Translations under genes and position numbers: made by a program
Assembly (NCBI GenBank): GCA_026770705.1
Contig: JANJGN010000557.1
Span: 3,945 to 64,000 of the forward strand
DNA: 60,056 bases
Direction of reading: 5' to 3'
Source: Isurus oxyrinchus
Taxonomy: Eukaryota
Shown here: positions 1 to 54,150 of the stretch, one piece after another
Position numbering within the stretch: the first letter of the stretch is position 1
Layout: every line of letters starts with the position of its first letter
Notes under the pieces: model-generated
Seen by the model: only the letters and a program-made list of their open reading frames with translations
Told to the model about the DNA's origin: nothing
Databases searched by the model: none

Positions 1-820
1 TAGAGAGAGAGATAGAGCAGAAGAGTGTGATAGAGAGAGATTGTGAGTGTTAGAGAGGGAATGTGTGTGTGTGAGAGAGAGAGATAGAGCAGAAGAGTGT
101 GATAGAGAGAGATTGTGAGTGTTAGAGAGGGAATGTGTGTGTGTGAGAGAGAGAGATAGAGCAGAAGAGTGTGATAGAGAGAGAGATAGAGCAGAAGAGT
201 GTGATAGAGAGAGATTGTGAGTGTTAGAGAGGGAATGTGTGTGTGTGAGAGAGAGAGATAGAGCAGAAGAGTGTGATAGAGAGAGATTGTGAGTGTTAGA
301 GAGGGAATGTGTGTGTGTGAGAGAGAGAGATAGAGCAGAAGAGTGTGATAGAGAGAGATTGTGAGTGTTAGAGAGAGAATGTGTGTGTGTGAGAGAGAGA
401 GATAGAGCAGAAGAGTGTGATAGAGAGAGATTGTGAGTGTTAGAGAGAGAATGTGTGTGTGTGTGAGAGAGATAGAGCAGAAGAGTGTGATAGAGAGAGA
501 TTGTGAGTGTTAGAGAGAGAATGTGTGTGTGAGAGAGAGAGAGATAGAGCAGAAGAGTGTGATAGAGAGAGATTGTGAGTGTTAGACAGAGGATGTGTGT
601 GAGAGAGAGAGAGATAGAGCAGAAGAGTGCAATAGAGAGAGATTGTGAGTGTTAGAGAGAGAATGTGTGTGTGTGTGAGAGAGATAGAGCAGAAGAGTGT
701 GATAGAGAGAGATTGTGAGTGTTAGAGAGAGGATGTGTGTGAGAGAGAGAGAGATAGAGCAGAAGAGTGCAATAGAGAGAGATTGTGAGTGTTAGAGAGG
801 TGTGTGTGTGTGTGAGAGAG
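1..820. repeat. ~72-bp compound GA/GT satellite
   Basis: Tandem unit gatagagcagaagagtgtgatagagagagattgtgagtgttagagag..aatgtgtgtgt..gaga; first two copies start at 11 and 83. Confidence 0.95.
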
Positions 821-824
821 AGCA

Positions 825-1335
825 GGTTGTAGAGATAGGGAGGGTTGTAGGGACTGGAACAGATTACAGAAATAGGGAGGGTACTGGGGGTTGAAGGTTA
901 CAGAGATGGGGAGGGTTGTGGGGGTTGGAGGTGGTTACAGATATAGGGAGGGGTGTAGGGGTTGAAGGTGGTTACAGAGATGGGGAGGATTGTAGAGGCA
1001 GGTGGAGGCTGCCTTAGGGAGGGTTGTAGGGGCTGGTGGAGGTTACAGAGATAGGGAGGGTTGTAGGGGCTGGAGGAGGTTACAGGTATAGGGAGGGGTG
1101 TAGGGGTTGAAGGTGGTTACAGAGATGGGGAGGGTTGTGGGGGTTGGAGGTGGTTACAGATATAGGGAGGGGTGTAGGGGTTGAAGGTGGTTACAGATAT
1201 AGGGAGGGGTGTAGGGGTTGAAGGTGGTTACAGAGATGGGGAGGATTGTAGAGGCAGGTGGAGGCTGCCTTAGGGAGGGTTGTAGGGGCTGGAGGAAAGG
1301 GAGAGAGAGAGGAGGTTACAGATATAGGGAGGGAG
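825..1335 (-). repeat. 37-bp minisatellite (G-rich strand on +)
   Basis: Tandem ttgtaggggctggaggaggttacagagatagggaggg; reverse complement of the array at 3985-4610. Confidence 0.9.
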
Positions 1336-1479
1336 ACAGTCAGAGAGAGAGCCTCCAGGAGATAGAGAGCGATAGAGAGATTGAGAGACAGACAGAGACT
1401 GAGAGAGGGAGAAGAGAGAAGGAGAGTGAGAGAGAGACAGAAAAAGTGTGAAAGATGGTGGAAGGGAAGAGTGGGGAGG

Positions 1480-1835
1480 TGTTGGCCTGATGGTATTTTC
1501 ACTGGACCAGTAATCCAGAGACCCAATGTAATGCTCCTGGGACCCTGGTTAGAATCCCACCACAGCAGTTGGTGGAATTTGAACTCAATAAAAACCTGGA
1601 ATTAAAAGTCCGATGATGACCAGGAAACCATTGCTGATTCTTGTATTTGGGTCACAAATGCCCTTTAGGGAGGGAAATCTGCTGTCCTTACCTGGTTCTG
1701 GCCTACATGTGACTCCAGACCCACAGCAATGTGGTTCACTTTTAAAAAGTGGCCTCTGAACAAGGGCAATTAGGGTTGGGCAATAAATGCTGGCCTGGGC
1801 AGCGATGTCCACATCACATGAAAGAATGAAATAAA
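1480..1835 (+). mobile_element. SINE, HE1-like (elasmobranch)
   Basis: Dispersed repeat with related copies near 9350-9670 (-), 34570-34930 and 35780-36030; tail (attagggatgggcaataaatgctggcc...catgaatgaa) shared with LINE 3' ends. Family name is from recall, not a search. Confidence 0.65.
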
Positions 1836-2404
1836 AGGACAGAGAGGGACAGACAGAGTCGAGAGACACCCAGAATGAAAAAAACACAGTAAACACTGGA
1901 AAATAAACATTCTGGTCTGATCTGGTCTTGTATACCTTCAAATGGAACACCAGTAAAACAGGGAAATAAGAGTACTGGGCCAAACTGTTAGAGAGGGTCA
2001 CATTTAGAGAGAGAGAGAGAGAGAGAAAGAGGGAGACACTGAAAGAGATAAGGACAAGGAAAGAAAGAGTGAGAGAGAGAGACAGACAGAGACACACAAA
2101 GAAGTAGAAAGAAAGTGATAGAGATGAAGCAGGAGAGAATGAGGAGAAAGATAGATAGATAGAGAGAGAGGATGGTAGAGAAAGAGAACGAGAGGAAAAG
2201 AGACAAAGGCAGAATGTGATGGAACACTGAATCCTTGTCTATGCGTTTTGAAATCCAGCCCAGAACTATCATTGGAAGATTCAGCGAGTGTCCAGTACAG
2301 GGGACCCAGCCCAACCTTCTCATCCTGACCTTCCCAGTGGGGCTGAAGAGGGCAGAGAGGAAACCTTCCTCTGTTATTCTGTTGTCGAATAAACACAACA
2401 ATTC

Positions 2405-3015
2405 TGGAACTCTGCCCTTTCTATCTCACGGATTAGAATATAAGGGGGCAGAGGTCATGCTTCAGTCTACATAAAGCCCTGGCTAGACCACACCTGGAGT
2501 CACTGTGAGACATTCTGGGCCCCACACCTTAGGAAGGATATATTGACCTCGGAGGGAGAGCAGTGTCAGTTTACCAGAATGAGACCGGGACTCCAAGGGT
2601 TAAATCACAAGGAGAGATTAAACACAAACTCGGCTTGTATTCCCTGGAAGTTAGAATGTTAAGCAGGAGATTTGATGAAAGTTTGCATGATAATAAGGGG
2701 AACAGATTGGGGGCGATAAAGAGAAACCATTTCCCCTGGTTGGGGGGAGTCTGGGACTCGGGGTCAGAGCCTAAAAAGGAATTAAATTAGGAAGTACAAA
2801 GGGTGGGAGAAATTTGGAACTCTCTTCCCCAAACAGGAACTGATGCACGATCAAGTTGTTCATTTTAAACCTGTGAGACTGATAGATTTTTGTTATCCAA
2901 AGGTATTAAAGGAGATGGGACAAAGGCATATGGGGCGAGTTTGCAGATCAGCCATGAACTCTTTGAATGGTGGAGCAGGCTCGAGGGGCCAAATGGCCTC
3001 CTCCTACCCTTATGT
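2405..3015 (+). mobile_element. CR1-type LINE 3' fragment (decayed)
   Basis: Broken translation GLEYKGAEVMLQ..ALARPHLE..FWAPHLRKDI..LGLYSLE, typical of the CR1 ORF2 C-terminus, followed by a CR1-like 3' UTR. Confidence 0.8.
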
Positions 3016-3406: not shown

Positions 3407-3620
3407 TTGCATCAATATGAACACATATTTGCACAAGGTGAAGGGCGTTGCGGAGGGACTGATAGTTCTCGGCGCCAGACAGTCAATGTCCCAGTGACCT
3501 TACTGCTGGTCCCAGGCCAGTGGGACAGGGAACATCGACACTGCAATATCCAGAAATGGGTGTGATACCACACAGCAACCCACCCGCGGCTGTCCCCTTC
3601 AAGTGTTTCAGGTATAAGAG
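3407..3620 (+). promoter_or_regulatory. HAMP: Putative hepcidin promoter
   Basis: TTGCATCA 3407-3414, C/EBP-like TTGCACAA 3429-3436, GGCGCC 3471-3476 followed by AGAC, and TATAAGAG 3613-3620 about 75 bp before the ATG. Confidence 0.55.
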
Positions 3621-3689
3621 CAGGAAGCTCCTCTAGTTACAAACCAAAGCGTCAAAGCAGAGCCAGAAGATCAGAAGAGACAGGCAGAG

Positions 3690-3781
3690 ATGGGAAGCTC
3701 CCAGATGAAATGGCGACTTGTCTTGTTCACTCTGACTTTGCTGCTCTCCCTGCAGCTGAGTCACTTCTTCTCCTTGTCGAG
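3690..3781 (+). CDS. HAMP: Hepcidin-like gene, putative exon 1 (signal peptide)
   Basis: MGSSQMKWRLVLFTLTLLLSLQLSHFFSLS then AG|GTTAAG donor; hydrophobic leader, ~90-nt coding length, TATA upstream, 3.1 kb before the mature-peptide exon. Ends in phase 2, so joining is unresolved. Confidence 0.6.
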
Positions 3782-3984
3782 GTTAAGCTAAGAGATGTCC
3801 CTCTGGGTGAGGTGTTTCTTGCACATGACTCTACGTCTACCACCCAGATAGACTGGTCACTTCCGCAGTTTGATATTATTATGTTCGTGCCTTTAATATT
3901 GTCGCCCTCTATGAATTTAACATCATTTCCTTCTGTCGTTTCCCCTGAAATTCTCATTCTTGTTTTCAATCCCTCCTCAGCGAC

Positions 3985-4610
3985 TCCCTATCTCTGTAAC
4001 CTCCTCCAGCCCGTACATCCCTCCCTATCTCTGTAAACTCCTCCAGCCCCTACACCCCTCCCTTTCTCTGTAACCTCCTCCAGCCCGTACAACCCTCCCT
4101 ATCTCTGTAAACTCCTCCAGCCCCGACAACCCTCCCTATCTCTGTAACCTCCACCAGGCCTTACAACCCTCCCTATCTCTGTAACCTCCTCCAGCCCCTA
4201 CACCCCTCCCTATCTCTGTAACCTCCTCCAGCCCCTACAACCCTCCCTATCTCTGTAACTTCCTCCAGCCCCTACAACCCTCCCTATCTCTGTAACCTCC
4301 TCCAGCCCGTACAACCCTCCCTATCTCTGTAACCTCCTCCAGCCCCTACAACCCTCCCTATCTCTGTAACCTCCTCCAGCCCCTACAACCCTCCCTATCT
4401 CTGTAACATCCTCCAGCCCCTACAACAATCCCTATCTCTGTAACATCCTACAGTCTCTACAACCCTCCCTATCTCTGTAACCTGCTCCAGACCCTACAAC
4501 CCTCCCTATCTCTGTAACCTGCTCCAGACCCTACAACCCTCCCTATCTCTGTAAAGTCCTCCAGGCCCCACAACCCTCACAATCACTGTAACCTCCTCCA
4601 GCCCCTACAA
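3985..4610 (+). repeat. 37-bp minisatellite in hepcidin intron
   Basis: About 17 copies of ccctccctatctctgtaacctcctccagcccctacaa. Confidence 0.95.
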
Positions 4611-6107
4611 TCCTCCTGAACTCTTTCCACAGAAAGTTTTCTGATTTCAAGCTGATTTCAGTGGCAGTCTGTCTCGGTTATACTCAGGAGGCATGTTTGA
4701 AATCGAGCCCCCCGCAACTTTTTTGCAAAGCTGGGAAGAGGCAATTCCAAGGAAGTGAACATATCCCCACAGGAATTTTAAATGTAACCCACGCCGGGAA
4801 TAGTGAGAGGGAGACTGATCCAGCCTGGGAGTGGGTTAAAGAGAGGCTGGGAGTCGAGAGTCGGAGAGAGGGATGGAATGGGGGAGGGAGGGATTGGAAG
4901 AGAGAGACACAGAGTGGGACGGGGAGGGGTGAAAGGGAAAGAACATAGGTGGGAGAGAGTGACAGAGGGAGAAATTAAAGAAGAGATGCAGAGTGAGGGA
5001 AAGTGAAAAGAGAAGAGAGTGTCCAAGAGAGAGAAATTAACAGGAAAGGGAGAGTTACAGAGTGAGCGAAAGTTACAAAAATAGTGTGAGAGAGAGGGAG
5101 AGATACAGAGTGGGAGAAGGAGACAGGGGAGAGAGAGGGAGAGAGACAGGAAAAGGGAGAGAGGAGAGAAAGATTGGGAGAGAGGGCAATTGAGAGGAAG
5201 AGTAGGAGAGAGAGAGACAGGGAGAGGAGGGGTGGATGAGAGGAAGAGAGAGAGAGATATGGAGCAGGAGAACACCTCCTCCGGTCCCGATGTTCCTCCA
5301 AAATCTCTGAAATTACTGCATCTCCCGGGTCCCCCTGATTCCCATCGCTCCACAATTGGCGGCCGTGCCTTCAGCTGCCTGGGGCCCTGAGCTCCGGAAT
5401 ACCCTCCCTTAACCTCTCTGCCTCTCTCTCTCTCTCTCTCCTTTAAGACGCTCCTTAAAAACTGACATCTTTGACCAAGCTTTTGGTCACCTATCCCTAA
5501 TATCTCCATATGTGACTCAGTGTTAGACTTCTCTCTGATTTACGCTCCGGTAATGTGGGCTGGGACATTTTGCAATGTCAGAGGCGCTGTGTAAATGCAA
5601 GTTGTGAGTGTTATGTGGAAGGGAGACCCCAGGCGGCATTCAGTGCCAGAGACTGGAGTTATTGTGTGCAGACCATATCTAATCTCTCCGAATGCACAAT
5701 CGGTTTGACTGTCAGCCAAAGCATTTTTGATATTTGATCCTTCTAACTGTTTATAACCAGGCCTACATCAAACACCGAGAGGCTGGTTAATCAACAGACA
5801 CCTTAGAGGATCGAGTGAAAGACAAAGAGGACTTGCATTTCTCTAGCGCCTTCCAACACATCAGGACGTCCCAAAGTGTTTCGCAGACAATCAAGTGCTT
5901 TTTTCTTTCATGTGAGGTCACTGATGTAATGTGGGAAAAGAATCAGCCATTGGCGCACAGTAAGATCCCACAGACAGCAGCATGATAATGACCAGCGTGC
6001 TCCCAGTACTTGCACTGCAAGTGTCAGTTCAGGGTGTCTGCTCGATTCTCTGCGACTCTCAGCTCTGAGTTAAAAGGACCACCAGGCATAATTGAGGAAT
6101 GACCGAG

Positions 6108-6815
6108 CTATCGGAGGGTCAGTATTGAGGGTGTGCTGCATTGTCAGAGGGTCAGTACTGAGGGAGTGCTGCATTGTCAGAGGGTTAGTACTGAGGGAGT
6201 GCTGCATTGTCAGAGGGTCAGTCTTGAGGGAGTGTTGCACTGTCGAAGGGTCAGTACCGGCGGGGGGATGCACAGTCGGAGGGTCAGTACTGAGGGAGTG
6301 TTGCATTGTCAGAGGGTCAGTCTTGAGGGAGTGCTGCACTGATGGAGGGTCAGTACTGAGGATGTGCTGCATTGTCAGAGTCAGTACTGAGGGAGTGCTG
6401 CACAGTCGGAGGGTCAGTACTGAGGGGGTGCTGCACTGTTGAAGGCGCTGTCTTTCAGATGAGACATTAAACTGGGGCAACCAATCTGCCCTCTCAGGTG
6501 GATATAGAGGATTCCATGGCCACAATTTAGATGAAGTGCGTCAGGAGTTGGGGGGTATGTGTGGAGGGGGTGGTGGGGGCTGGATGGGTGGAGTTATGTC
6601 CACTTTCCTGGGGCAAACATTTATCCCTCAACTGACATTGGTAAAAAACTGAAAATCGGGGCCATTATCACATTTCTGTTTGTGGGATCTTGCTGTGCGT
6701 GAATTGCCTGCTGCGTTTCCTACATTACAGCGGTGAGCTCACTTCAGAAAAAGTCCTTCCATCAGCTGTTGAACATTTTGGGCCATCCTGAGGTGGGGAA
6801 AGGTGCTAGAGAAAT
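6108..6815 (+). repeat. 33-bp minisatellite (6108-6440) running into a SacSINE1/Deu-core-like SINE
   Basis: Tandem gtcagtactgagggagtgctgcactgtcagagg, continuing as gtctttcagatgagacattaaac...tgggatcttgctgtgcg...tttcctacattaca. Confidence 0.8.
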
Positions 6816-6906
6816 GCGCCATCCTCCTTCCAATGACGCGCCTGATTGAAATGATGCCTTCTTTCTTTCCGGAATGTTCTCACCTATTGTCCTCCTGCTT
6901 TTCCAG

Positions 6907-7023
6907 GGCTCCTTGCTGCAGCGCCAGAAGAGAATGGGCAAACAGCAGCTCTGCAGATTCTGCTGTAACTGCTGTAATTCGAGAGAATCAAATGAGACTT
7001 GTGGTATCTGCTGTAGATATTAG
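6907..7023 (+). CDS. HAMP: Hepcidin-like last exon (furin site + mature peptide)
   Basis: Acceptor cctcctgcttttccag|, phase 0, GSLLQRQKR-MGKQQLCRFCCNCCNSRESNETCGICCRY*. RxKR furin site and the C-x2-CC-x-CC-xn-C-G-x-CC 8-Cys hepcidin pattern. Too short for the ORF track. Confidence 0.92.
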   Translation, partial: GSLLQRQKRMGKQQLCRFCCNCCNSRESNETCGICCRY

Positions 7024-7379
7024 ACCCTGGCCTCATTCACGCAAGGTCATCCTGCACCATGCCACAGCCTCTCCCCTCCTTATCTACTGCTTAGCAATCT
7101 ATTTCACACAGGCCCTGTTCATTAATTCCAACTGAAACATTACCTGCGTTTTACAGCAGGGAAAGAAGCCATTTGGCCCATCTGCTCCATGCTGGTGTTT
7201 CTGCTCCACACGAGTCTCCGCCCACCCCTTCTCCATCTCACCCCATCACCATATCCTTCTATTCATTTCTCCCTCGTGTGTTTATCCAGCTTCCCCTTAA
7301 ATACATCGACACTATTCACCTCACGTGACTGTGTTTGTGTCTGTCTTTATGAGCGTGTGTGTGTGTGTGTGTGACTGTC

Positions 7380-7830
7380 AATATGTGTGTGTCAATGTGA
7401 ATGAGTGAGTGTGTCAGTGTGTCTGTGTGGGTGTGTGTGACTGTCAGTGTGTGTCAATGTGAATAAGTGAGTGTGTCAGTGTGTCTGTGTGGGTGTGTGT
7501 GACTGTGTCAGTGTGTGTCAATGTGAATGAGTGAGTGTGTCAGTGTGTCTGTGTGGGTGTGTGTGACTGTGTCAGTGTGTGTCAATGTGAATGAGTGAGT
7601 GTGTCAGTGTGTCTGTGTGGGTGTGTGTGACTGTGTCAGTGTGTGTCAATGTGAATGAGTGAGTGTGTCAGTGTGTCTGTGTGGGTGTGTGTGACTGTGT
7701 CAGTGTGTGTCAATGTGAATGAGTGAGTGTGTCAGTGTGTCTGTGTGGGTGTGTGTGACTGTGTCAGTGTGTGTCAATGTGAATGAGTGAGTGTGTCAGT
7801 GTGTCTGTGTGGGTGTGGGTGTGTGAGTGT
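7380..7830. repeat. ~62-bp GT-rich minisatellite
   Basis: Tandem gtgtcaatgtgaatgagtgagtgtgtcagtgtgtctgtgtgggtgtgtgtgact.. Confidence 0.9.
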
Positions 7831-9679: not shown

Positions 9680-11640
9680 AGATGTCACATCCAGTCGTGG
9701 ACAATTAAACAACTCACTGGAGGAGGAGGCTCCACAAATATCCCCATCCTCAATGATGGAGGAACCCAGCACATCGGTGCAAAAGACAAGACTGAAGCAT
9801 GCGCAACAATCTTCAGCCAGAAGTGCTGAGTGGGTGATCCATCTCGGCCTCCTCCGGAGGTCCCCAGCATCAGAGATGCCAATCTTTAGCCAATTCAATT
9901 AATTCCATGTGACATCAAGAAAGGGCTGAAGGCACTGGATATTGCAAAGGCTCCAGGCCCTGACAATATTCTGGCAATAGTACTGAAGACTTGTGCTCCA
10001 GAACTTGCTGCACCCCTAGCCAAGCTTTTCTGGAATTTTCTAGTACAGCTGCAACACTGGCAACTACCTGGCTATGGGGTACGTCCTGTACACAAAAAGC
10101 AGGACAAATCCAACCCAGCCAATTCCCCAGCAGTCTATTCTTGATCATTACTAAAGTGATGGAAAGGGTCATCAACAGCGCTTGCAAGCAGCACCTGCTT
10201 AGCAAGAACCTGCTCACTGACGCTCAGTTTGTGTTCCACCAGGATCATTCAGCTCCTGGCCTCATTACAGCCTTGGTTCAAACATGCACAAATGAGCTGA
10301 ACTCCAGAGGTGAGAGGGACTGCCCTTGACATCAAGGCAGCATTTGACTGAGTGTGGCAAATCAAGGAGCCCGAGCAAAACTGGAGTCAATGGGAATAGG
10401 GGGAAAACTCCCCGCTGCTTGGAGTCATACCCAGCACAAAGGACGATGGTTGTGATTGTTGGGGGTCAATCATCTCTGTTCCAGGACATCACTGCAGGAG
10501 TTACTCAGGGTAGTGTCCTAGGCTCAAACATCTTCAACTACTTCATCAATGACCTTCCTTCCATCATAAGGTCAGAAGTGGGGATGTTTGCTGATGTTTG
10601 CACAATGTTCAGCACCATTCACGGCTCCTCAGATACTGAAGCAAGTTATGTCCAAATGCAGCAAGACCTGGATAACATCCAGGCTTGGGCTGACAGGTGA
10701 CAAGTAACATTCATGCCACACAAGTACCTGGCAATGACCAGCTCCAACAAGAGAGAATCTAATTGAAGGTGCAGAAAATTTGGATTTATGTTCAAGAGCC
10801 AGCCAGGACCAGCAGCTAGGGCGCCAAAGCGTACACATCCTTACGTGAAAACTTAAAAACCTGTACAAAGGGCTCAGTTGGAAATTTGCAATGAGGAAAT
10901 GGGAGACACACACACAAGGACACTGGGTGACTCAATCAAGAAATGGGGAAGGTTATTTCACACCGTCCGATGGCCTTGAACCACATCCAGTCAGCCCCCG
11001 GAAACCTTTTGCATTGAACAAACATAGATTCTTTGCTGTCTCAAAAGGACAATAGCCAGTCTCTGCCCTGTAATTACTGTACAAGAACACAATTATCAGC
11101 CCACCGGAGGGTCATTGTGCTGTGGCCTTTGTCTAACTAATACCATTACCTTGTAACTGAGAGTAAAAAATATATAAACTGTGCTCATTTGAACCTCGGT
11201 GGAGAAGCACCTGTACTGCCCAGCGTTTGCTCCCCACATGCCTAATAAAGGAACCACTTGAATATTGCATCTGGAGTCCGAGTGTTGAAATTTTGTACCA
11301 GAATATTCCACAGACCATTCATAACCATCGCCCCTTGACATTCAATGGCATTACCATCAATGAATCCCCCAATATCAACATCCTGGGAGTTACCATTGAG
11401 CAGAAACTGAACTGGACCAGCCATATAAACACTATGGCTGCAAGAGCAGGTCAGAGGCTGGGAACCCTGCAGACAGTAACTCACCTCCTGACTCCCCAAA
11501 GCCTGTCCACCATCTACAACGCACAAGTCAGGAGTGTGATGGAATACTCTCCACATGCCTGGATGAGTGCAGCTGCAACAACACTCAAGAAGCTCGACAC
11601 CATCCAGGACAAAGCAGCCCGATTGATTGGCTCCCCTTCC
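9680..11640 (+). mobile_element. Decayed non-LTR retrotransposon (CR1/L2-group RT), interrupted by a solo LTR
   Basis: Fragmented RT motifs GVTQGSVLG..F..FINDLP, MFADVC, QQDLDNIQAWAD, LGVTIEQKLNWTSHI, VRSVMEYSPHAW; many stops and frameshifts. Confidence 0.9.
10764..11321 (+). mobile_element. Solo LTR inserted into the LINE
   Basis: 558 bp, TGAA...TTCA termini, flanks TAAT/TAAC, internal TATATAA and AATAAA; splits the LINE sequence gagaatctaac|catc. Confidence 0.7.
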
Positions 11641-13135
11641 ACAGAGCTAGATAGATTCTTGATTAACAAGGGGGTGAAAGGTCATTGGGGGTAGGCAGGA
11701 ATGTGAGGTTGAGGTGACAATCAGATCAGCCATGATCTTACTGAATGGCGGAGCAGGTTCGAGTGACTGAGTGACCTACTCCTGATCCTAACTCAGATAT
11801 CCAGATGTTCTCAAAGGCAATTGGGGATGGGCAACAAATACTGGCCTAGTCAGCGACACCAACATCCCTGAAATGAATAAGAAAAAAATGTATCAATCAA
11901 TTAAATTTATTGATTAATCGAATTGAAATTCCTCCAGCTGCCGTGGTGGGATTTGAACCCGTGCCTTCAAAGCATTCACCTGGGCCTCTGGATCACTGGC
12001 CTAGTGCCATTCCCATTGTGCGACTGTCTGCTATCATCATGGCTCTTTCACATCGATGTGGAAGTCCTGATAACAGAAGCATTGGACGAGGTACAGAAAG
12101 GTGACAAATCAGGAGCTCCATTGCTCAATATGAACGGATAATAAAGATAAATGAACATAAACCTTCCAGTCGCTAATTAGGGAGTCACTGTGGAGCCCAT
12201 GAGTCCCTCGCAGCGCTATTGCAACCTTCTGGATCCCCAGTAGGGGACTCGGGGTGCAGCTGTGTCTTCCTCATCATTTGGAAAAGCCGGAATTGTTCGG
12301 GTGCCCCTTCAAACAGGCCGAAGATGCAGTGGGTGATGTCTCCCACAGGCCCTGGGAGACCTCCCCTGCCAATTTGTTTTGTAGCTTATTCTTCAACTGC
12401 GACATTGGATCAGCTTGAAAAAGGGTGAGGCTGAGGCAATACCACCAGGTAAGCGTCTATCCTCTCACACGTCACCCCCCCCACCCCCGTAACCAACACA
12501 GTCCCTCCCATCGTGCTGGAGGAGCATAATGTGCACATTCCCCTCCTTCCAATCAGTCTCCTCCCTTCCTCTCTAATCCTTGATCTTATTGTGTTCGAGG
12601 TTGACATCCCAGTCCTCCTCCCTAGACTGTCTGATGTTGACATCCCAATGCCCCATGTAGACCTGACCTCTCTCCAACTAGAGGCCCATTGTACTGTGAC
12701 TTACAGAGACCACCGGCCCCCCTCGATTCCCACCCCCACCCCTACTCTCTATATTACCTGCTCCCCACTGACAGGCTGCAGATGCCTCCCCTGACTGGGA
12801 TTGTGCCACCTGCGGCCTAGTATCAAGCCCCCACCCCCAGGACCGACGTGTGTGAGGGACTGACCACGTCCTGCACACCATGCTGGGCACCACCAACCCA
12901 GGACTGCCAGGCTGTCCCCACCACACTGGACTGGGACTAGAATAGGCATGCCAAGCACAGCTCTCTAAATCGTGGCGCAGACCCACAGCACTCGCAATGT
13001 TTTGTGGCCCGAATCCTTGCTGAGGAACTGCCCAGCACTAAAAGCAAAAAAACTGCGGATGCTGGAAATCCAAAACAGAAACAGAAACAGAAATACCTGG
13101 AAAAACTCAGCAGGTCTGGCAGCATCGGCAGAGAA

Positions 13136-14459: not shown

Positions 14460-17400
14460 CTAGAGAACACACAGAAAGAAATCATCACTGACTCTCCGCT
14501 TTCAATCTCTCACTCTGGCTGAACAATCAAGCTTCATATCACTGCAACATTTGCTGTAATATTGACCCATTCACTGGGATTCAATGTGGAATGAATGTTT
14601 TCACTGTAAACACTCTAAGAGTGGACAATCGGAACTTTCTCCTTAGCGTGGAACATTGGTGAGAATGGATCATTGTGCTGTTGGACTCCCTGTCCAATGT
14701 TTCTCTCCATCGCTGTGTACAGGATTGTGCTGTAGAAAATTCTGGAAACCTTTAGTGCCGGGTGAAAATCCATCTCAGCCGTGTGTGCGAATCGGGCAGG
14801 ATCGGGATGGACTCCCCCACGGATTTACACCCCCCGCTTAATAAACAGTTCCAATCTTTACCCAGAGAGAGGGGAGAATGTGGAACTCGCTCCCACAGGG
14901 AATGGTTGAGGTGAATAGTAGGAAATTAGGAAGTGAAATTGCTTGAAAAGCTTGGAGATGCAAGGGTTAAGTGTTACCGTGCTACCACTGGTGGGAGAGT
15001 GTAACTACAGCGTGATGTTTACATAGGCAATCCCCATTATGAACAAGGACATCATGTGAAAAATGGGCACTGGAAAGCTGAGAACTTGATGTAAGCTTTT
15101 CAGCAACAGGAATTCCCTTCCTAAACCTCTCCACTTCCCTCTTATTCTCAGATACTCATACAAAATTTCACACAAAATCACGTAAGGAGGAATTGGGACT
15201 GGTGACTGGTCAAAGAGTTAGATTTCAGGAAGGTTCTTAAAGTAGGATAGAGAGTTGGAGAGGCAGAGAGTATCTGTGAGTATCTCTGTGCATCTGAGTG
15301 TCTGTAATAGACTTTGCAATTTCCATATTCTTCCATAAATATGAAAGGGAACACAAATCCCAGAATCCAGGTCAACTCTCCGGTGCAGCACTGAGGGAGG
15401 TCAGGTAATCCACAGGGGAGTATGTGCTAGTGTGTTTGTTTGTGAGTGTGTCTTTGTGTGTGCTCATAGATGTGGGATTGTGTGTCTGCAGGTGTCTATT
15501 TAAGGCTGGATATTTATGTGTGTTTTTGTAGTGTTTCAATCTGAGAGAGATGTTGAAGTTTGCCTTAAGTAACGTTCCACAGTGATGGTTATGAACCCCT
15601 CCACTGCTCCATGTTCATTCTCTGAGCACACTGATAGTCTCCAGTGTCCCTGGATGTAACGTGAGGAATCACCAACCACAGCTCATTGTTGGAACTTGTT
15701 CTGTTCATTGTGATATTCAGATGTCAGGACCGGACTCAACAAGACAGATTGCAGGTTTACCAACAGAAAGTGAACAACAATTTATATTTAAAGGGAAGAG
15801 AGTGCTGGTTAATCAGCAAGTGGTCTCTGATTGGAGGAGGTGTTGCCATGGAAAATAATGTGTGTGAGATGTAAAGTTTAGACAGCTTGTCTCTTCATTC
15901 AGCAACAATCAAATAAAGATCAGTTAACTTCTATCGACTGTGAAGCACTTTGAGAGGCATGAGAATGTGGATACTGAGAACAGGCTGCACTGTCAGAGGG
16001 TCAGCGCTGAGGGAGTGCTGATGTAGAATGAAGGGTGTCCGTTCTTACCTTGCACAGTTAGTACGAGGGTCCGCTCCGATGAAACAGATGGATATCTCAC
16101 TCTGCAGCTGAGAGTGTGTCCATGGTGTTTGAGTGATGGGATCAGGGTCAGAACAGAAGTATAGGTCAGAGTGACACCATGCTGAGTTACAGTGTTTGAG
16201 ACTGATCCAGGTACGTCAGTGGGAGTGTCCCAGGTTAAGACAGGTGCTGCTGTTCCATTGCACGTTGTGTTGAAGGTGCAGCTTACATCCACAGGCTTTC
16301 CTGCAATAATTTCAGCAGGGAATATCGTGGGTTTATCTGTGAAATCTAACAGACAGAGAATGGATCCTTTTAGAGAAATATAACGTGAAGCATCAGTTCA
16401 AATAGAAATCACAGTCCCACAAGAAAAAGCACTTTTACAAGGATGATATCAGATCTGAGAGGTTACAATGATTAGGAGAGAATTTCCTGCTTTGAGACTT
16501 TGGTGTTTCTGTCTCTCAGCTTAATACACGTTCACTCCGAGACACTTGAACTTATAATAGTGGGTGAGGGTGGTGGAGCAGACCAGAGTTTGGAGTGCAC
16601 TAACCCATCAGTCCCTCAGCGATCTGGGCCATTTTTTACTTTGCAATTTGTGGGAGCTTGCTGTATGCAAATTGGTTGCTGTGTTTCCCACATTACAATA
16701 GTAACTACAATTCAGGAATCAGCTCATTGGCTGTGAAGTGATTTGGTCCATGCTGAGGTGGTGAAAGGTGCTACAGAAATGTGAATCTTTCTTCTGTCGC
16801 TAAGTCAGACTTCGAGACAGGATTAGAGAGATCGATAGGAGTGGATAACCTGATAACATTGATGGACACAGTCAATACATTTAATCATTGATATTAAAGT
16901 GAGTATTAGAGGTTGCTTTAGGAGTGAATTGGAAGCGATCACCAGGTTATTGAGAATCAGACAGTGTGTTATAATAAGCTGTGTTTTGTGTTAATACGTA
17001 AACGTCACAGTTTGTGTTATTTCCCATTGAGTGTTGAATGTGAATTGTTGAGTAATTATAACACAGCACTTACCAGAAACGGGAAGCTGGGTTACAGGGT
17101 AATAGTTATGGCTCGGACCATTGTCAAATTCTATTCTGAAAAAATAAGGACCCGCATCTTCCCGTCTGATGTTGTTTATAATCAGGGAACAGTCGCCATC
17201 TTTCAGGTCTCCAGACAGCCGGGTCCAATGGTGGAACCGTGGTAACTCGTGACTGTGATCCTTGGAGTGAAAGGCTATAGACGATGTTCTCCATTCCTCA
17301 TTATTAAACCAGACTCCACCTCGCGGTTGGTTTTCCAGACACGATGGATAACTGTAATGACATGGAATCTGTACACAGGAACCTTCCTGCACTGTCACCT

Positions 17401-20400
17401 GTCGTGGATTGTCACCTTTCCACTCTTGCGAGGGTTCAGCTGGGGAGAGAAATCTCAATATTTATCTCTGGATGGTTTGTGGATCCACTGAACCCAATAT
17501 TTACAGATGAGGCTGAATTGGGGGGATGGTCAATACTGAGGAGAATGGCAACAAATTATATTGTCAGGAAGAATAGAAAAACAGGATATAATTTAAATGG
17601 AGACAGGCTGCAGAATGCAGTACAGAGGGATCTGGGTGTCCTGGTACATGAATCACAGAAAGTCAGCAATCAGGAACACCACAGAATGAGGAAGGCAAGT
17701 GGAATGTTGGCCTTTATTGCAAAGGGATGGAGTATAAAAGGAGGGAAGTCTTGCAACAGCTGCACAGGGTGTTAGTGAGATTGTAACAGGATCATTGTGT
17801 ACAGGCAGTTCAGAGAAGCTTCACTGGGCTGATTCCTGGGATTAAAGGGTTTGTCCTGTGAGGAAATGTTGAGCAGGTTGGGCCTGTATCCATTGGAGTT
17901 TAGAAGAATGAGGGGTGAGCTTATTGAAACATATCCGATTCCGAGGGGGCTTGACAGGGTGGATGCTGGGAGGATGTTTCCCCCTCGTGGGGGAATCTAG
18001 AACCAGGGAGCACAGTTTCGGAATGAGGGCTCTCCCATTTAAGACTGAGATGAGGAGGAATTTCCTCTCTCAGAGGGGCGCTAGCCTGTGGAATTCTCTT
18101 CCCCAGAGAGCAGTGGAGGCTGGGCCATTGAATAGACTCAAGGCTGAGTGAGGCAGGTTTTTGATCGACAAGGGAGTCAAGGGTTTGGGGGACAAGCAGG
18201 AAAATGGAGTTAAGGCCGCAACCAGATCAGTGAGAGCAGGCTGGAGGGACCGAATGGCCTGCTCCTGTCCCTATTTCTTATGTTCCTACATTCTTACCTT
18301 CCTAAAATATTAAAGCTGCAGAATAAACATGCAAGTGAATGACCCGCTCGACCCACCTTCCATCTGGGGGTCCCATGGGGAGGACCCTTCCTGAGCCAGA
18401 TCCACCAGCCAACATGGTCTGGATCTGAGCACAGGAGACACGGGGGGGGAGGGACTAACAGGCTCCTTGTGACAGGCCCCGTCTGTCCAATGGCTGGCTT
18501 TCAGCTGCCAAGGCCAGAGTGGTCCTTGCTAAAACCGGCTCAGGACAGGCCAGGACCCCTGTGCAGACCCCCTCCAGCGCTGCAGCCTCTGTACAAACCC
18601 CTCATGCGCTTGTGGAGAGACACAAACAAGGCTGCACATTACCGAGGAGAATCCCCTCTACGGGCTAAGGGGCTGACTCATCACCTTAAACTCAGCAAAT
18701 GAGGAGGCTCTCGCTCGGTATCGGGGCTTGGCATTGGCTCAATAAAAATAAGAGCTGTTTCAGCACAGTGGCTGGGGTGGGAACCTGATTGAAGGGATTC
18801 AAACATGGAGTTCCGGGAAAGATGGGAACGGATTCGGGAGATGGAAACACGTTGCAGGACTTTGGAGGGGAAAGAGAGGCTGGGGATGGGACGGGAGATT
18901 ACACAGACAGTGTGAGGGGTGGAAGGTGTAGTGGGGAGGAGACACTTTACTCAGGGGGGAGGTGTCATCACCCCTCAGCTCGGTTTACGTTACAGCTATG
19001 ATGTGGATTCAATCACACACAATAAGCTCATGGATCTGGGAGCAGAAATAGACAAATCATTAAAAATAGTGACGCTGGTTAACACGGCCAAAAAACAAGC
19101 AAATCAAACACTATTATTTCCCATTGAGTGTTGGATGTGAATTGTTGAGTAATTATAACACAGCACTTACCAGAAACATGAAGCTGGGTTTCAGGACGGT
19201 CGTTGTATCTATTCCTGCTGTCAAAATCTGTTCTGAATAAATAATATCCTGCATCTTCCCGTCTGATGTTGTTTATAATCAGGGAACAGTCACCATCTTT
19301 CAGGTCTCCAGAAAGCCGGGTCCGATGGTGGAACCGTGGTAACTCGCGACTGTGATCCTTGGAGTGAAAGGCTATAGACCATGTTTCCCAATTCCTTCTC
19401 ATATACCAGATTCCAACAGGTGATCTCGGTACTAAATATGATGGGTAGCTGTAATGACACGGAATCTGTACACACGAACCTTCCTGCGCTGTCACCTCTC
19501 GTGGAGTGTCACCTTTCCACACTTGTGGTAGTCCAGCTAGGGGGAGAAATATCAATATTTAACTCTGAATGTTTTGTCAATCCACTAGACTCAAAATCCA
19601 CCCCCTCCATCACTGGGGCACAGTGGCTGCAGTCTGGACTCACAATGAATGCCCCAATGTTTCACAACACATTGAAGAGAATCCTGGATACAGGAGTGGA
19701 CAAGTTCATTCTACATTGGCTCGTAGCCCTCAGGAACCTGCTTAGTGAAGCCAGTCTTCCACCCAACACAGTGTCTACAAGACACACTAATTGAAGTGAG
19801 TTCACTGCTGATTTACAAACTAGGACAATGGATTAGGAGCCTTCAGAATTCCCCCATTATCACCATCATGAATCATGAATTGGCCTAGCTGTCCTAGATC
19901 CTCAGTGTCTAAGGCAGTGGTTCCTATTGTGATGAAAGTATAATAATTTTCATAAAATTTTATAGTATATTGTGAAGTAGGTTTATGGGGGTACGCATGA
20001 TGGGTCTGCATGTGATTTAAGTACATTTGGAGTTAATTAGATTGGAAGTTTAAAATGATCAAAAGGAGCTAGGTGCTTGACATGCTATTGAGTAAACATG
20101 GATGCTGCTTAGCATGGAAGGTATGAAGAGAATTTGCATTTTTATTTCAATGAAGGGGTTGTTGGATTTCAAAGGAATCTTAGTTTGTTTACAAATAGCC
20201 AGATAAGCAAGACTAAGGAATGTGCTTATTTTTCTCAAAGGCTCTTGGCAATATGGGCACCACAAAAGAATTTGTTATGAGGAAGATACAGTTTCAAAAA
20301 CATTTGGAACAATAGAATTTTCATGTTACAAAGAGAGAAATATATATCTATCAGGGAGAATGAAAGGCTATGTGTCAGAATGCCATGTAAGATCTAACAC

Positions 20401-28363: not shown

Positions 28364-29489
28364 GCGTGAAAAAGGGAGAGGGGGTCAGGAGGTTTGTGGA
28401 TGGTGGCAGGGATGAAGATTCTTGGGAACATGAGACAACCCACTGGGGGAGAGGGGGAGAGGCGGAGAGAGGGAGGAAGGGACTGAATGGGTCTGTGGTT
28501 GGTGTGGTTTGGAATGAAATGTTTCCCCAGTGACGACTTGATGCTGAGTCATTGGGGACAGAGATTCAGTNNNNNNNNNNNNNNNNNNNNNNNNNNNNNN
28601 NNNNNNNNNNNNNNNNNNNNNNNNNNNNNNNNNNNNNNNNNNNNNNNNNNNNNNNNNNNNNNNNNNNNNNNNNNNNNNNNNNNNNNNNNNNNNNNNNNNN
28701 NNNNNNNNNNNNNNNNNNNNNNNNNNNNNNNNNNNNNNNNNNNNNNNNNNNNATTAACTGGCTTTGTGAAATCAGCTTTTTGTCACCTGTCCCTAATACC
28801 TCATTATGTGTCTCAGAGATGGATTTATATGTAGGTAACAATCCCCTGAAGAGATTTGGGACAGTTTGTTACATTAAGTGTGCCAGATAAATGCAAGTTG
28901 TTGAAGGAAAGTTGATCTGCCTCGATTCAGAATGGTAATTCAGAGGGTCCATCGACAGGGCGTGTGTGCAACAGCCTCGCAATAAATGCATTGCACGGCA
29001 ACAACTAAGCATGTCCTTTGATGCTGATGCATCCCAGTACTGCTGTGTGGACACATCACAACCGAGGGACTGCCTGACTGCGTGCAGCCAACATGGCCGA
29101 ATAGTAATTAGCAGAAATGTGATGTCACTGAACTTTGTTGACATTTCAGAAAGTGCTTTCTGAATTCTGCAACTTGTTTATTCTGTGATAGATTACAAGA
29201 AGCCTTTGCATTTTCTATAATATTACATTTATTGTCACAAGGGATTGAAATGCCCAGACACCACCACCTGGAAGTTCCCCTCCAAGACACACATCATCCT
29301 GATTTTGAAATATATCGCCATTCCTTCACTGCCACTAGGGTCAAAATCTTGGACTTCCTTCTCTAACTGCATTGTGGGTGTACCTACACCACATGGACTG
29401 CAGAGGGTCCGGAAGGCAGCTCACCACCACCTTCTCAAGGTAATTAGGGATGGGCCATAAATGCTGGCCTAGCCAGTGATGCCCACTTC

Positions 29490-52559: not shown

Positions 52560-54150
52560 AGGTGAGACGAGAATGACTGCCTTTGACATCATGGCTGCAT
52601 TTGACCGAGTGTGGCATCTAGGAGCCCGAGCATAACTGGAGTCAATGGGAATCAGGGGTGGTACGAAAGTATAATAATTTGCTTAATATTTTCCTGGTTT
52701 GTTTTAAAGTAGGTTTATGAGTGTGAGTGTAGATGGATCTGTCTGTGTGGTTTAATTACATCTGGAGTCAGGTAGACTGCAAGCTTGAGATAATCAAAAG
52801 AAGCTAGATGTAGAAATGTACTTGAAATGCTAATGAGAACACATGGAGGCTGTGTTAACATGTAAGGTGTGAAGGGGTTGTTTAGATTTCAAAGGGATGT
52901 TGGTCTGTTTAGGACAAGCCCAATAAGCAAAGCTAAGGAGTTTTTTTTAATTTTACCCAAACTTCATTGACAATATTGGCAACATGAAAGTTTATATTAT
53001 GGGAAAGGTACAGTTCCAAAGAATTTACATCAAAGAGAGAGAAACATTTATAAAGGAGAATGAAAGACTATGTTGGGGCCATGTAAGATCTAACAGGAGT
53101 GTGTGAAACAGGCTTGAAGAAGCCTCCAGGCATTTGTGCATAAGTCTGTTATGTTCAGTAAATAAAGTTGGAGAAATCCATTTAGAATTCCACTGTCAAG
53201 TGTGTGCTGTGTTAACTCGCTGGATTTGTTTTTAATCTAAAATCTTATTTTGGACTGTTGCCTTAAACGGGCTCTGTAACTGGGAGTCAGGTTAATTAGG
53301 AATTTGAGAATATATTTTAGCTGTAACTAACTGTGGTATTATGTCTGTGCTTGAAATCTTTTATTTTGTTAATAAATATCTTAATCCAATTTTTAAAATC
53401 TCTAAAGGTTGTGGTCATCTCATTACTCCTGAATTCAGTGCACGCTTCTTATAATAAATACAAATTGCAAAACTATTGTGATAGCATGACCAATTTTCCC
53501 TTGTGGATTTGGAGCACCAAGCACACATCATCTGCCATGTCATGTCACAGGGAAAACTCTCCACTCATTGGATTCATACCAAGTACAAAGGAAGGTGGTT
53601 GTGGTTGTTGGAGGTCAGTCATCTCAGTTCCAGGATATCACTGCAGGAGTTGCTCAGTGTAGTGTCCTAGGCCCAAACATCTTCAGCTGCTTCATCAATG
53701 ACATTCATTCTATCAGATGGTCAGAATTATGGAAGGTCGCTGATGATTGCACAACGTTCAACATCATTCATGACTCATCAGATGCTGAAGCAGTCCATGT
53801 CCAAATGCAGCAAGACCTGGACAATATCCAGGCTTGGCCTGACAAGTGGCAAGTAACATTCATGCCACACAAGTGCCAGGCAATGACCATCTCCAACCAG
53901 AGAGAATATATCCATCTCCCATTAATGTCCAATGGCATCACCATTGCTGAATCCCCCACTCTCAACACGCTGGGGGTTAACGTTGACCAGAAACTGAACT
54001 GGACTAGCCATATAAACACTGTGACTACAAGAGCAGGCCAGAGGCTGGGAATCGTGTGGTGAGTAACTCACCTCCTGACTCCCCAAAGCCTGTCCATCAA
54101 CCTCAAGGCACAGGTCAGGAGTGTGATGGAATACTCTCCACCTGCCTAGG
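52560..54150 (+). mobile_element. Decayed LINE RT fragment (same family as 9680-11640)
   Basis: VVVGGQSSQFQDITAGV...FINDI...ADDCT...QQDLDNIQAW. Confidence 0.88.
52659..53549 (+). mobile_element. Solo LTR inserted into the LINE
   Basis: TG...CA termini, flanks GGGG/GGGA, splits atcagggg|aaaactc; family of 19928. Confidence 0.7.

What the first reader, a model, noticed from the sequence alone, without database searches (positions are those of the whole stretch)
6907..7023. Atypical hepcidin: longer loop with an N-glycan sequon, no xxH-type N-terminus
The predicted mature 29-mer MGKQQLCRFCCNCCNSRESNETCGICCRY keeps all 8 Cys. The Cys5-Cys6 loop is 8 aa (NSRESNET, with sequon NET) against 4 in human hepcidin-25. 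The N-terminus lacks the DTHFP/QSHL motif associated with ferroportin regulation and ATCUN metal binding. Inference: a functionally diverged, possibly antimicrobial (HAMP2-like) or glycosylated hepcidin.
Basis: partly seen in the sequence, partly recalled or inferred. Interest (0 to 1): 0.8.

Follow-up and report, generated by a model that had tools for sequence, protein, structure and literature searches.

The report
Long-loop hepcidin exon, incomplete gene copy
This is the genuine last exon of a hepcidin-family gene whose unusual long-loop peptide is made in large amounts by a close relative or sister copy, but the copy in this window lacks its middle exon and is one of many copies in the genome.

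Summary
Window 6907-7023 (+) follows a canonical acceptor and reads GSLLQRQKR, then a 29-residue, 8-Cys peptide with an 8-residue Cys5-Cys6 loop, one NET sequon and Lys (not His) at position 3. It passes Pfam Hepcidin (33.1 bits, cutoff 27).

A TATA-like box and a signal-peptide exon lie at 3613-3781. Siglec-type V-set exons are neighbours.

Contigs of two RNA-like runs from one sample stop exactly at 3782 and start exactly at 6906. There they run on into in-frame coding letters of a middle exon. Those letters occur nowhere in the 60 kb. As assembled, this copy therefore cannot make the prepropeptide.

The abundant RNA also differs from the window inside the peptide (K3R, S16W). So transcription is shown for a near-identical exon, not for this copy.

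The scan's own unchecked notes report many copies of this gene on other pieces of the same genome.

An antimicrobial or glycosylated role is untested:
- Likeness to sea bass Hamp1 and Hamp2 is equal.
- Net charge is only about +2.
- The peptide keeps 2 of the 4 ferroportin-patch residues.

Verdict: a new variant of a known kind, of modest interest here.

The parts
3471..3476 (+). GGCGCC motif 137 bases upstream of the TATA-like box. It is a possible BMP-responsive-element-like site; that identity is recalled, not tested.
   Evidence: one of only 2 GGCGCC in the 60 kb. The letters of the HAMP BMP-RE come from my recall; PMC13407002 (passages) names BMP-RE1/2 but does not print the letters.
3613..3617 (+). 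TATA-like box of the hepcidin gene copy.
   Evidence: In one search the summed contig depth of X1 and X3 rises about 100-fold (X1) and about 40-fold (X3) from bin 3500-3630 to bin 3631-3761. The tool warns that contig depth is a poor measure.
3690..3781 (+). Coding part of exon 1: ATG and a signal-peptide-like stretch (MGSSQMKWRLVLFTLTLLLSLQLSHFFSLS, then AG of a split codon). The donor is GT at 3782-3783.
   Evidence: One search gives the translation. In one search, 12 contigs of X3 fit up to 3782 and then run on into letters that are not in the window. No other letter is listed for X1 or X3 within 3690-3781.
3984..4616 (.). Tandem array of 17 units of 37 bases inside the intron. Contigs of X1, X3 and X13 stop being collinear with the window at 4625, its right edge. 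This is a candidate site for the loss of exon 2.
   Evidence: TRF. table 8: records 1, 19 and 11 all end at 4625 with 77, 76 and 319 letters unplaced. 4625 is not among the places that the tool lists as cut at repeats.
6877..6906 (+). Pyrimidine-rich tract and AG acceptor of the last intron.
   Evidence: In one search, 9 contigs of X3 begin to fit at 6906.
6907..7023 (+). Last coding exon: end of the propeptide, the mature peptide and the stop codon.
6922..6933 (+). RQKR, a furin-type proprotein convertase site.
   Evidence: Read from the sequence. Cleavage there is inferred from what is known of the family.
6934..7020 (+). Predicted 29-residue, 8-Cys peptide. Places 6941 (K3) and 6980 (S16) differ from the abundant RNA, which reads R3 and W16.
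   Evidence: table 3: 6941 A>G in all depth of X1 and X3; 6980 C>G in 185815.6 of 193814.9 (X1), 539040.4 of 539229.5 (X3) and 108.1 of 108.1 (X13).
6976..6999 (+). The 8-residue hairpin loop NSRESNET. The sequon NET is at 6991-6999.
7024..7300 (+). 3' untranslated region covered by the RNA-like contigs. Its end was not found.
   Evidence: bins 7037-7298; 7139 A>T in X1, X3 and X13; no AATAAA or ATTAAA between 7021 and 8042. From about 7165 the stretch looks like a dispersed repeat, so the depth there is not specific.

Best explanation
Window 6907-7023 is the last coding exon of one copy of a lineage-specific 'long-loop' branch of the hepcidin family. The copy lies among Siglec-type receptor genes.

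The peptide type is real. A signal-peptide exon and a middle propeptide exon are spliced onto this exon. A convertase is expected to cut after RQKR (inferred). That would release a 29-residue, 8-Cys hairpin whose tip is twice the usual length.

In a close relative or a sister copy this RNA is extremely abundant. The copy in this window has its promoter, exon 1 and exon 3, but not the middle exon. Splicing exon 1 directly to exon 3 is out of frame. The copy also carries two private amino-acid changes. It is therefore most likely a damaged duplicate, or a damaged piece of assembly, and not the source of the abundant peptide.

For the peptide type I think a role other than classical ferroportin control is somewhat more likely than not (about 0.5-0.55). 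This is inference only.
For: Family membership:
- Pfam Hepcidin 33.1 bits against a cutoff of 27.
- PDB hits to bass and human hepcidin.
- The 8-Cys pattern appears in 0 of 200 shuffles.

Gene anatomy:
- TATA-like box at 3613 and an ATG exon at 3690-3781 with a hydrophobic core.
- A canonical acceptor at 6905-6906.

Splicing and abundance:
- In X3, 12 contigs leave the window after 3782 and 9 enter at 6906.
- Read by hand, the loose letters are open in exactly the frames set by exon 1 (R VDTALGSSTI) and exon 3 (EKSVDSPDT G).
- Summed depth on the exon bins is 84,000-860,000, against 10-3,000 on unique intron bins in X1 and X3.

Middle exon absent:
- 0 matches in the whole window, both strands, for two 17-letter patterns at up to 3 mismatches and one 13-letter pattern at up to 2.
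- The fourth pattern gave 2 hits, at 41079 and 47530, against 1.25 expected by chance.
- X1, X3 and X13 all lose collinearity at 4625.

This copy is not the expressed form: 6941 A>G in all depth of X1 and X3; 6980 C>G in 96% (X1) and over 99.9% (X3).

Context: Siglec-type V-set exon, best PDB hits sialoadhesin and MAG at 1e-15.

Many copies, some truncated, are reported by the scan's unchecked notes.

Function:
- The bioactive patch of human hepcidin is His3, Phe4, Ile6 and Phe9 (PMC7915682, passages). Here the residues are K3, Q4, L6 and F9.
- One X1 contig shows a shorter, different start before 6950.
Against: - All RNA support comes from one sample. X1-X4 share sample S1 and study P1; I laid X1 and X3.
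- The runs are only guessed to be RNA, they are contigs, and their organism is coded. It may not be the window's species.
- X5 (same organism label, another study) has no depth on either exon.
- The tool warns that contig depth cannot rank parts of a gene.
- The absence of exon 2 rests on short pattern searches. It could be an assembly collapse at the 37-base array.
- One search lists 348 open AG..GT segments of suitable phase in the intron, so a different middle exon cannot be excluded from sequence alone.
- For an iron role: the peptide keeps the 6-residue length before Cys1, L6, R8 and F9, and an aromatic C-terminus. The loop is the variable, extracellular part in the ferroportin complex (PMC8235187, section 5). 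A GGCGCC lies in the promoter. Expression is liver-hormone-like in scale.
Confidence: 0.72

Rival explanations
1. The copy is intact in the animal. The middle exon is missing from the window only because the assembly collapsed or misjoined at the 37-base tandem array.
For: - A 17-unit array sits where collinearity with related contigs ends.
- Exon 1 is letter-identical to the RNA, and exon 3 has no stop or frameshift.
- The scan's notes describe small junction defects in other copies of this assembly (unchecked).
Against: - There are no N and no obvious join in 3783-6906.
- Two private amino-acid changes fit a drifting copy.
- Truncated copies are reported elsewhere in the genome (unchecked).
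Confidence: 0.25
2. The long-loop peptide is this lineage's iron-regulatory hepcidin. It binds ferroportin through a changed N-terminal patch, with the long loop left outside the transporter.
For: - Very high abundance in one sample.
- It lies at the Siglec/MAG-type locus; the human HAMP-MAG neighbourhood is recalled.
- L6, F9 and the 6-residue start are kept.
- The loop is 'highly variable' and 'largely extracellular' in the complex (PMC8235187).
- GGCGCC in the promoter.
Against: - His3 and Phe4 of the four-residue patch are replaced by Lys and Gln.
- The start varies among expressed contigs: K/R at position 3, and a shorter form before 6950.
- Unchecked notes of the scan say that the same animal also transcribes a hepcidin with the usual start.
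- In one search I saw only a contig (X1, 6936 to 7020, depth 6460) whose flanks fit and whose peptide part is skipped or replaced. Its letters were not shown.
Confidence: 0.22
3. The peptide is a host-defence (antimicrobial) hepcidin, analogous to teleost Hamp2.
For: - Loss of His3 and Phe4.
- Gene amplification and variable mature peptides, as in teleost Hamp2 families (notes).
- In sea bass, Hamp1 but not Hamp2 regulates ferroportin (PMC5665920, title and abstract start in the listing).
Against: - It is no closer to Hamp2 than to Hamp1.
- Net charge is about +2 and pI 8.2, and the added loop residues include two Glu.
- There is no activity data.
- It cannot be an orthologue of Hamp2 if the teleost Hamp2 duplication arose within bony fish (recalled).
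Confidence: 0.3
4. Asn20 of the loop carries an N-glycan.
For: - A single N-E-T sequon sits at the exposed hairpin tip.
- No change to the sequon is listed for the abundant RNA of X1 and X3.
Against: - One sequon in 29 residues is not rare by chance.
- The Asn lies 10 residues from the C-terminus and directly before a disulfide Cys, where occupancy is uncertain (general knowledge, recalled).
- I found no paper on a glycosylated hepcidin (3 papers listed, none on this).
Confidence: 0.3
5. The exon is translated on its own from the in-frame ATG at 6874 (a 49-residue ORF with a short hydrophobic start), so the copy needs no exons 1 and 2.
For: - The ORF 6874-7023 is open.
- Unspliced contigs run from the intron into the exon (X3 record 23, X1 record 8).
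Against: - The hydrophobic start is just the translated pyrimidine tract of the acceptor.
- The unspliced contigs are about a thousand-fold below the exon depth.
Confidence: 0.03

Closest known systems
Human hepcidin-25 (HAMP; PDB 1m4f and others)
   Same: - Same 8-Cys frame, with C-x2-CC-x-CC and C-x2-CC.
- Six residues before Cys1.
- An RX(K/R)R-type site before the peptide.
- Signal-peptide exon and last-exon layout.
- A Siglec/MAG-type neighbour (the human map is recalled).
   Different: - The loop has 8 residues instead of 4.
- K3 and Q4 stand in place of the His3 and Phe4 of the bioactive patch.
- No X-X-His start.
- A sequon in the loop.
- Multi-copy (the scan's notes).
Sea bass Hamp1 (iron-regulatory type; peptide printed in PMC5665920)
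   Same: - 13/25 identities over LCR.CCNCC...CG.CC.
- Leu before Cys1.
- Six residues before Cys1.
   Different: - The QSHLS start is not kept.
- The loop is 3 residues longer.
Sea bass Hamp2 / bass hepcidin (PDB 1s6w; antimicrobial type)
   Same: - 13/23 identities; CRFCCNCC and CCR+aromatic are identical.
- No His3.
   Different: - The loop is 3 residues longer.
- Leu6 is kept.
- Orthology is not expected.
- No activity data.

Membership tests
Hepcidin family (Pfam PF06446) | Profile match above the curated cutoff | tested here: met
   33.1 bits against 27, E 6.8e-08, residues 5-37 on profile positions 24-52 of 53.
Hepcidin family (Pfam PF06446) | Eight Cys in the order C-x2-CC-x-CC-loop-C-x2-CC | tested here: met
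   Cys at 7, 10, 11, 13, 14, 23, 26, 27. Alignments.
Hepcidin family (Pfam PF06446) | Convertase site directly before the mature peptide | tested here: met
   RQKR at 6922-6933. Cleavage itself cannot be tested here.
Hepcidin family (Pfam PF06446) | Complete three-exon gene giving an in-frame prepropeptide | tested here: not met
   Exon 1 and exon 3 are present. The middle exon seen in RNA is absent from the window. A direct exon 1-exon 3 join is out of frame. This holds for this copy as assembled, not for the peptide type.
Hepcidin family (Pfam PF06446) | Disulfide-bonded beta-hairpin fold | tested here: inconclusive
   the single-sequence AlphaFold2 model (pLDDT 77.9) shows two helices. This conflicts with the bent beta-hairpin of solved hepcidin (PMC7915682). 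I do not trust the model and did not search with it.
Iron-regulatory hepcidin (HAMP / Hamp1 type) | N-terminal patch His3, Phe4, Ile6, Phe9 within the first nine residues | tested here: not met
   Patch as stated in PMC7915682. Here the residues are K3, Q4, L6, F9, so 2 of 4 are kept in kind.
Iron-regulatory hepcidin (HAMP / Hamp1 type) | X-X-His (ATCUN) start | tested here: not met
   Position 3 is Lys in the window and Arg in the RNA.
Iron-regulatory hepcidin (HAMP / Hamp1 type) | Binds ferroportin and causes its occlusion or internalisation; RNA follows iron and BMP signals | not testable with these tools
   The only lead is GGCGCC at 3471. That these are the letters of the BMP-RE is recalled.
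Teleost Hamp2-type antimicrobial hepcidin | Closer to Hamp2 than to Hamp1 | tested here: not met
   26.6 bits (13/25) to Hamp1 against 25.8 bits (13/23) to Hamp2.
Teleost Hamp2-type antimicrobial hepcidin | Direct antimicrobial activity | not testable with these tools
   Only net charge of about +2 and pI 8.17, which does not discriminate.
N-glycosylated secreted peptide | N-x-S/T sequon in a secreted, exposed segment | tested here: met
   NET at residues 20-22. Occupancy cannot be tested here.

The most novel reading that the evidence does not exclude
In this cartilaginous-fish lineage the dominant circulating hepcidin is an amplified, long-loop, possibly N-glycosylated form. Either it has taken over or shares iron control through a re-shaped N-terminal contact with ferroportin, or it is a new glycopeptide arm of liver-derived defence. 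The many copies beside paired Siglec-type receptors would then be a co-amplified immune gene block.
Probability: 0.15. Interest if true: 0.7.

Novelty: new variant of a known kind. Interest (0 to 1): 0.35.

Why it matters
Cartilaginous fish are where the ferroportin cysteine needed for hepcidin binding first appears (PMC8235187, section 7 passages). Their hepcidins therefore bear on how the hormone-receptor pair arose.

A very abundant hepcidin with a doubled hairpin tip and a changed start would show that the family split into different forms early and outside teleosts.

My searches of the held library found no paper that describes a shark hepcidin sequence. One proteome paper lists hepcidin among nurse shark plasma proteins (PMC9207270, one passage).

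For this window the practical point is smaller. This copy is incomplete, so it should not be taken as the gene that makes the peptide.

Tried and rejected
Searches and models that gave nothing usable:
- Word-index protein search with the open frame 6850-7020, scoring residues 18-57. No candidate shared three words. This is uninformative, because even bass-type hepcidins did not surface.
- Full HMMER search of the 38-residue exon product against 1.84 billion representatives. It gave 0 hits at E up to 0.001. That is expected for so short a query in so large a library, and is no evidence that relatives are absent.
- AlphaFold2 on the single sequence. It gave helices, so I rejected the model and made no fold search.
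- A search for a different middle exon by enumerating open AG..GT segments. It found 348 segments. The best-scoring lie in repeats, and none resembles the RNA's exon.
- Self-BLAST of promoter/exon 1, intron parts and exon 3 against the window. It found no second hepcidin piece, only dispersed repeats.
- Poly(A) signal search. None lies between 7021 and 8042, so the 3' end is left open.
- Literature searches. One search was badly framed and gave only general shark papers.
- PMC3225996 is not held.

Limits:
Exon 3 was searched alone, and exon 1 was only translated.
- Supplements are closed and I did not ask for them. The supplement of PMC9207270 may hold the nurse shark hepcidin sequence and could bear on whether the long loop is general in sharks.
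I made no test of it.

Full report
**What is there**

Window 6899-6906 is a pyrimidine-rich acceptor ending in AG. From 6907 the + strand reads GSLLQRQKR, then MGKQQLCRFCCNCCNSRESNETCGICCRY, then TAG at 7021-7023.

The 38-residue exon product matches Pfam Hepcidin at 33.1 bits, above the curated 27 (E 6.8e-08). It covers 33 residues over 29 profile positions. Among solved structures the hits are:
- bass hepcidin 1s6w (E 0.072), with a 3-residue gap in the loop;
- an unrelated BUD31 homologue (8ro0, E 0.84), which scored between the two;
- human hepcidin 1m4f (E 2.9), with a 4-residue gap in the loop.

Cys residues stand at 7, 10, 11, 13, 14, 23, 26 and 27. There is one sequon, NET at 20-22. 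Net charge is about +2 and pI 8.17.

The 8-Cys pattern occurs once in the six frames of the window and in 0 of 200 block-shuffled windows. No second such exon exists in the 60 kb.

**The rest of the gene**

Upstream lie a TATA-like box (3613) and an ATG at 3690. The ATG opens a typical signal-peptide exon (MGSSQMKWRLVLFTLTLLLSLQLSHFFSLS) that ends at a GT at 3782-3783.

Downstream neighbours are Siglec-type genes. The V-set ORF at 36245-36709 hits sialoadhesin and myelin-associated glycoprotein at 1e-15 to 1e-14. From memory, human HAMP lies next to MAG, so this looks like the ancestral neighbourhood. I did not test that map.

**RNA evidence**

The look-up of sequencing runs listed 19 runs. 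Eighteen hold some part of 6907-7330. Four hold half or more of the words, and all four come from one sample of one study (X1-X4, 'organism A'). Their kind is only guessed to be RNA.

I laid 4 of the 19 on 3500-7400: X1, X3, X5 and X13.

- In X1 and X3 the summed contig depth is 84,000-330,000 on the exon 1 bin and 200,000-860,000 on 6906-7298. On unique intron bins it is 10-3,000. The tool warns that contig depth is a poor measure, so I lean mainly on the ends.
- In X3, 12 contigs fit up to 3782 and then continue with letters that are not in the stretch. Nine contigs come in from foreign letters and fit from 6906. These are exactly the predicted exon borders.
- Read by hand, the foreign letters are open in the frames that exon 1 and exon 3 demand: after the Arg codon at 3780-3782 they read VDTALGSSTI, and before 6907 they read EKSVDSPDT.

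A middle coding exon is thus spliced between the two. The runs are RNA, or hold much RNA, and a near-identical gene is spliced as predicted and is very abundant in that sample.

X5 has the same organism label but comes from another study. It has zero depth on both exons, so expression is not general.

**This copy is incomplete**

The two ends of that middle exon are not in the window.
- The two 17-letter patterns gave 0 matches at up to 3 mismatches on both strands of the whole window.
- A 13-letter pattern gave 0 matches at up to 2 mismatches.
- A 14-letter pattern gave 2 matches, at 41079 and 47530, inside repeated Ig exons, where 1.25 are expected by chance.

The low-depth intron contigs of X1 and X3 and the DNA contigs of X13 ('organism C') are collinear with the window over most of 3602-4004 and 4625-6935, at roughly 1-6% difference. 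All three break at the same place, 4625. This is the right edge of a 17-unit array of 37 bases (3984-4616). There, 77, 76 and 319 letters stay unplaced.

That is where I would look for the lost exon.

Joining exon 1 (which ends with two letters of a codon) directly to exon 3 (which starts a codon) shifts the frame. One search shows that 348 open AG..GT segments of fitting phase exist in the intron, so sequence alone cannot exclude a different middle exon. None has RNA support among the joints shown (15 shown, 669 not shown).

So, as assembled, this copy cannot encode the prepropeptide. Whether the animal or the assembly lost the exon is open. I put 0.25 on the assembly.

**This copy is not the abundant form**

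Inside the peptide the RNA differs from the window in two places:
- 6941 A>G (Lys3 to Arg), in all depth of X1 and X3;
- 6980 C>G (Ser16 to Trp), in 185,815.6 of 193,814.9 (X1) and 539,040.4 of 539,229.5 (X3).

The 3' untranslated place 7139 also differs. Organism C's DNA has W16 but keeps K3. Ser16 is so far private to the window.

Only its near-twin is shown to be transcribed. For X13, 98 further differences were not shown, so I cannot say that organism C's loop is otherwise identical.

**More than one form**

- One X1 contig (depth 6460) fits up to 6936 and again from 7020, with the peptide part skipped or replaced.
- Another X1 contig enters at 6950 from letters that would give a shorter start.

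These hint at sister transcripts with other mature peptides. I could not read them.

The scan's earlier notes are unchecked AI notes. They say that this long-loop gene occurs many times on other pieces of the same genome, that some copies are truncated or off by one base at the first junction, and that the same animal also transcribes a hepcidin with the usual start. I tested none of this beyond the hints above. It did change my reading from 'the hepcidin gene' to 'one copy of a family', and it explains why the RNA need not come from this locus.

**What the peptide may do**

The bioactive epitope of human hepcidin is the first nine residues, above all His3, Phe4, Ile6 and Phe9 (PMC7915682, abstract and introduction passages). 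The window has K3, Q4, L6 and F9, so half the patch is kept. There is no X-X-His start.

In the ferroportin complex the 'highly variable hepcidin loop' is 'largely extracellular' and the two termini are buried (PMC8235187, section 5). The long loop, even with a glycan, does not by itself argue against ferroportin binding. The changed start does.

Against the two sea bass peptides printed in PMC5665920 the likeness is equal: 13/25 to Hamp1 and 13/23 to Hamp2. 'HAMP2-like' is therefore at most an analogy. The modest charge, and the two Glu among the added loop residues, do not point to a membrane-active peptide.

A GGCGCC lies 137 bases upstream of the TATA-like box, one of only two in the window. 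From memory these are the letters of the BMP-responsive elements of HAMP, which PMC13407002 names without printing them. This is a lead for iron control, not a test.

My odds for the peptide type:
- other than the classical iron hormone, about 0.5-0.55;
- iron hormone, about 0.2-0.25;
- Asn20 glycosylated, about 0.3.

**What is known in print**

In the held library I found no paper describing a shark hepcidin sequence:
- 'hepcidin' with 'shark': 208 papers, 25 listed, three opened by passage;
- 'hepcidin', 'cartilaginous fish' and 'ferroportin': 4 papers;
- 'hepcidin' with 'elephant shark': 14 papers, listing only;
- the phrase 'shark hepcidin': 0 papers.

PMC9207270 lists hepcidin among nurse shark plasma proteins that have no whale shark orthologue in its comparison (one passage). 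Its supplement was not seen. I found no paper on a glycosylated hepcidin. Subscription journals are largely outside this library.

**Verdict**

The peptide type is a new variant of a known family, and it has already been met repeatedly by this scan on other DNA of the same genome. The copy in this window is incomplete and differs from the expressed form. Interest for this window is modest (0.35).

Noticed in passing
window 3984-4616, 6114-6439, 7358-7821: Three tandem arrays lie in and beside the hepcidin copy: 37 bases x 17, 33 bases x 10 and 64 bases x 7. The first two reach summed depths of 2.8 and 7.8 million in their peak bins in the DNA-like run X13, so they are genome-wide satellites or parts of dispersed elements.
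   Followed up: partly
window 3471-3476: GGCGCC, one of only two in the 60 kb, lies 137 bases upstream of the hepcidin TATA-like box. A TTGCACAA (C/EBP-like) at 3429 and a TGACCT half-site at 3495 are nearby. All the motif meanings are recalled.
   Followed up: partly
window 6936-7020 and 6950 (contigs of run X1): One contig fits both flanks of the mature-peptide region but not the region itself. Another enters at 6950 from letters that give a shorter start. These are possible sister hepcidin transcripts.
   Followed up: no
window 16991-17458 (-), 19079-19555 (-), 36245-36712 (+): Three similar V-set ORFs. The third was tested and is Siglec-type, with best solved relatives sialoadhesin and MAG. 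Together they look like parts of paired receptor genes flanking the hepcidin copy.
   Followed up: partly
window 37918-49395 (+): About ten or eleven near-identical Ig-domain ORFs (...NLTWRHLNVPMNRTSSNNELWLVIPHVTSRDTGDYQCVAENEHGAVEGFITITVE...) are each followed by TG/CA-rich microsatellite. Three N runs (28571-28752, 39216-39360, 40134-40430) were left untouched.
   Followed up: no
window 5835-5993 (+) and 6660-6817 (-): An inverted pair of a dispersed repeat (74% alike) lies in the last part of the intron, with further copies at 16622-16781, 49518-49603 and 55488-55622. In X13 the contig that breaks at 4625 continues into the opposite strand of this element.
   Followed up: partly
window 6858 (run X13): Organism C's DNA contig carries 22 extra letters behind 6858, just upstream of the acceptor. 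They are absent from the window and from X1 and X3.
   Followed up: no
window 10326-11694 and 53568-54062 (+): ORFs with reverse-transcriptase-like wording. I took them by eye for LINE fragments and did not search them.
   Followed up: no
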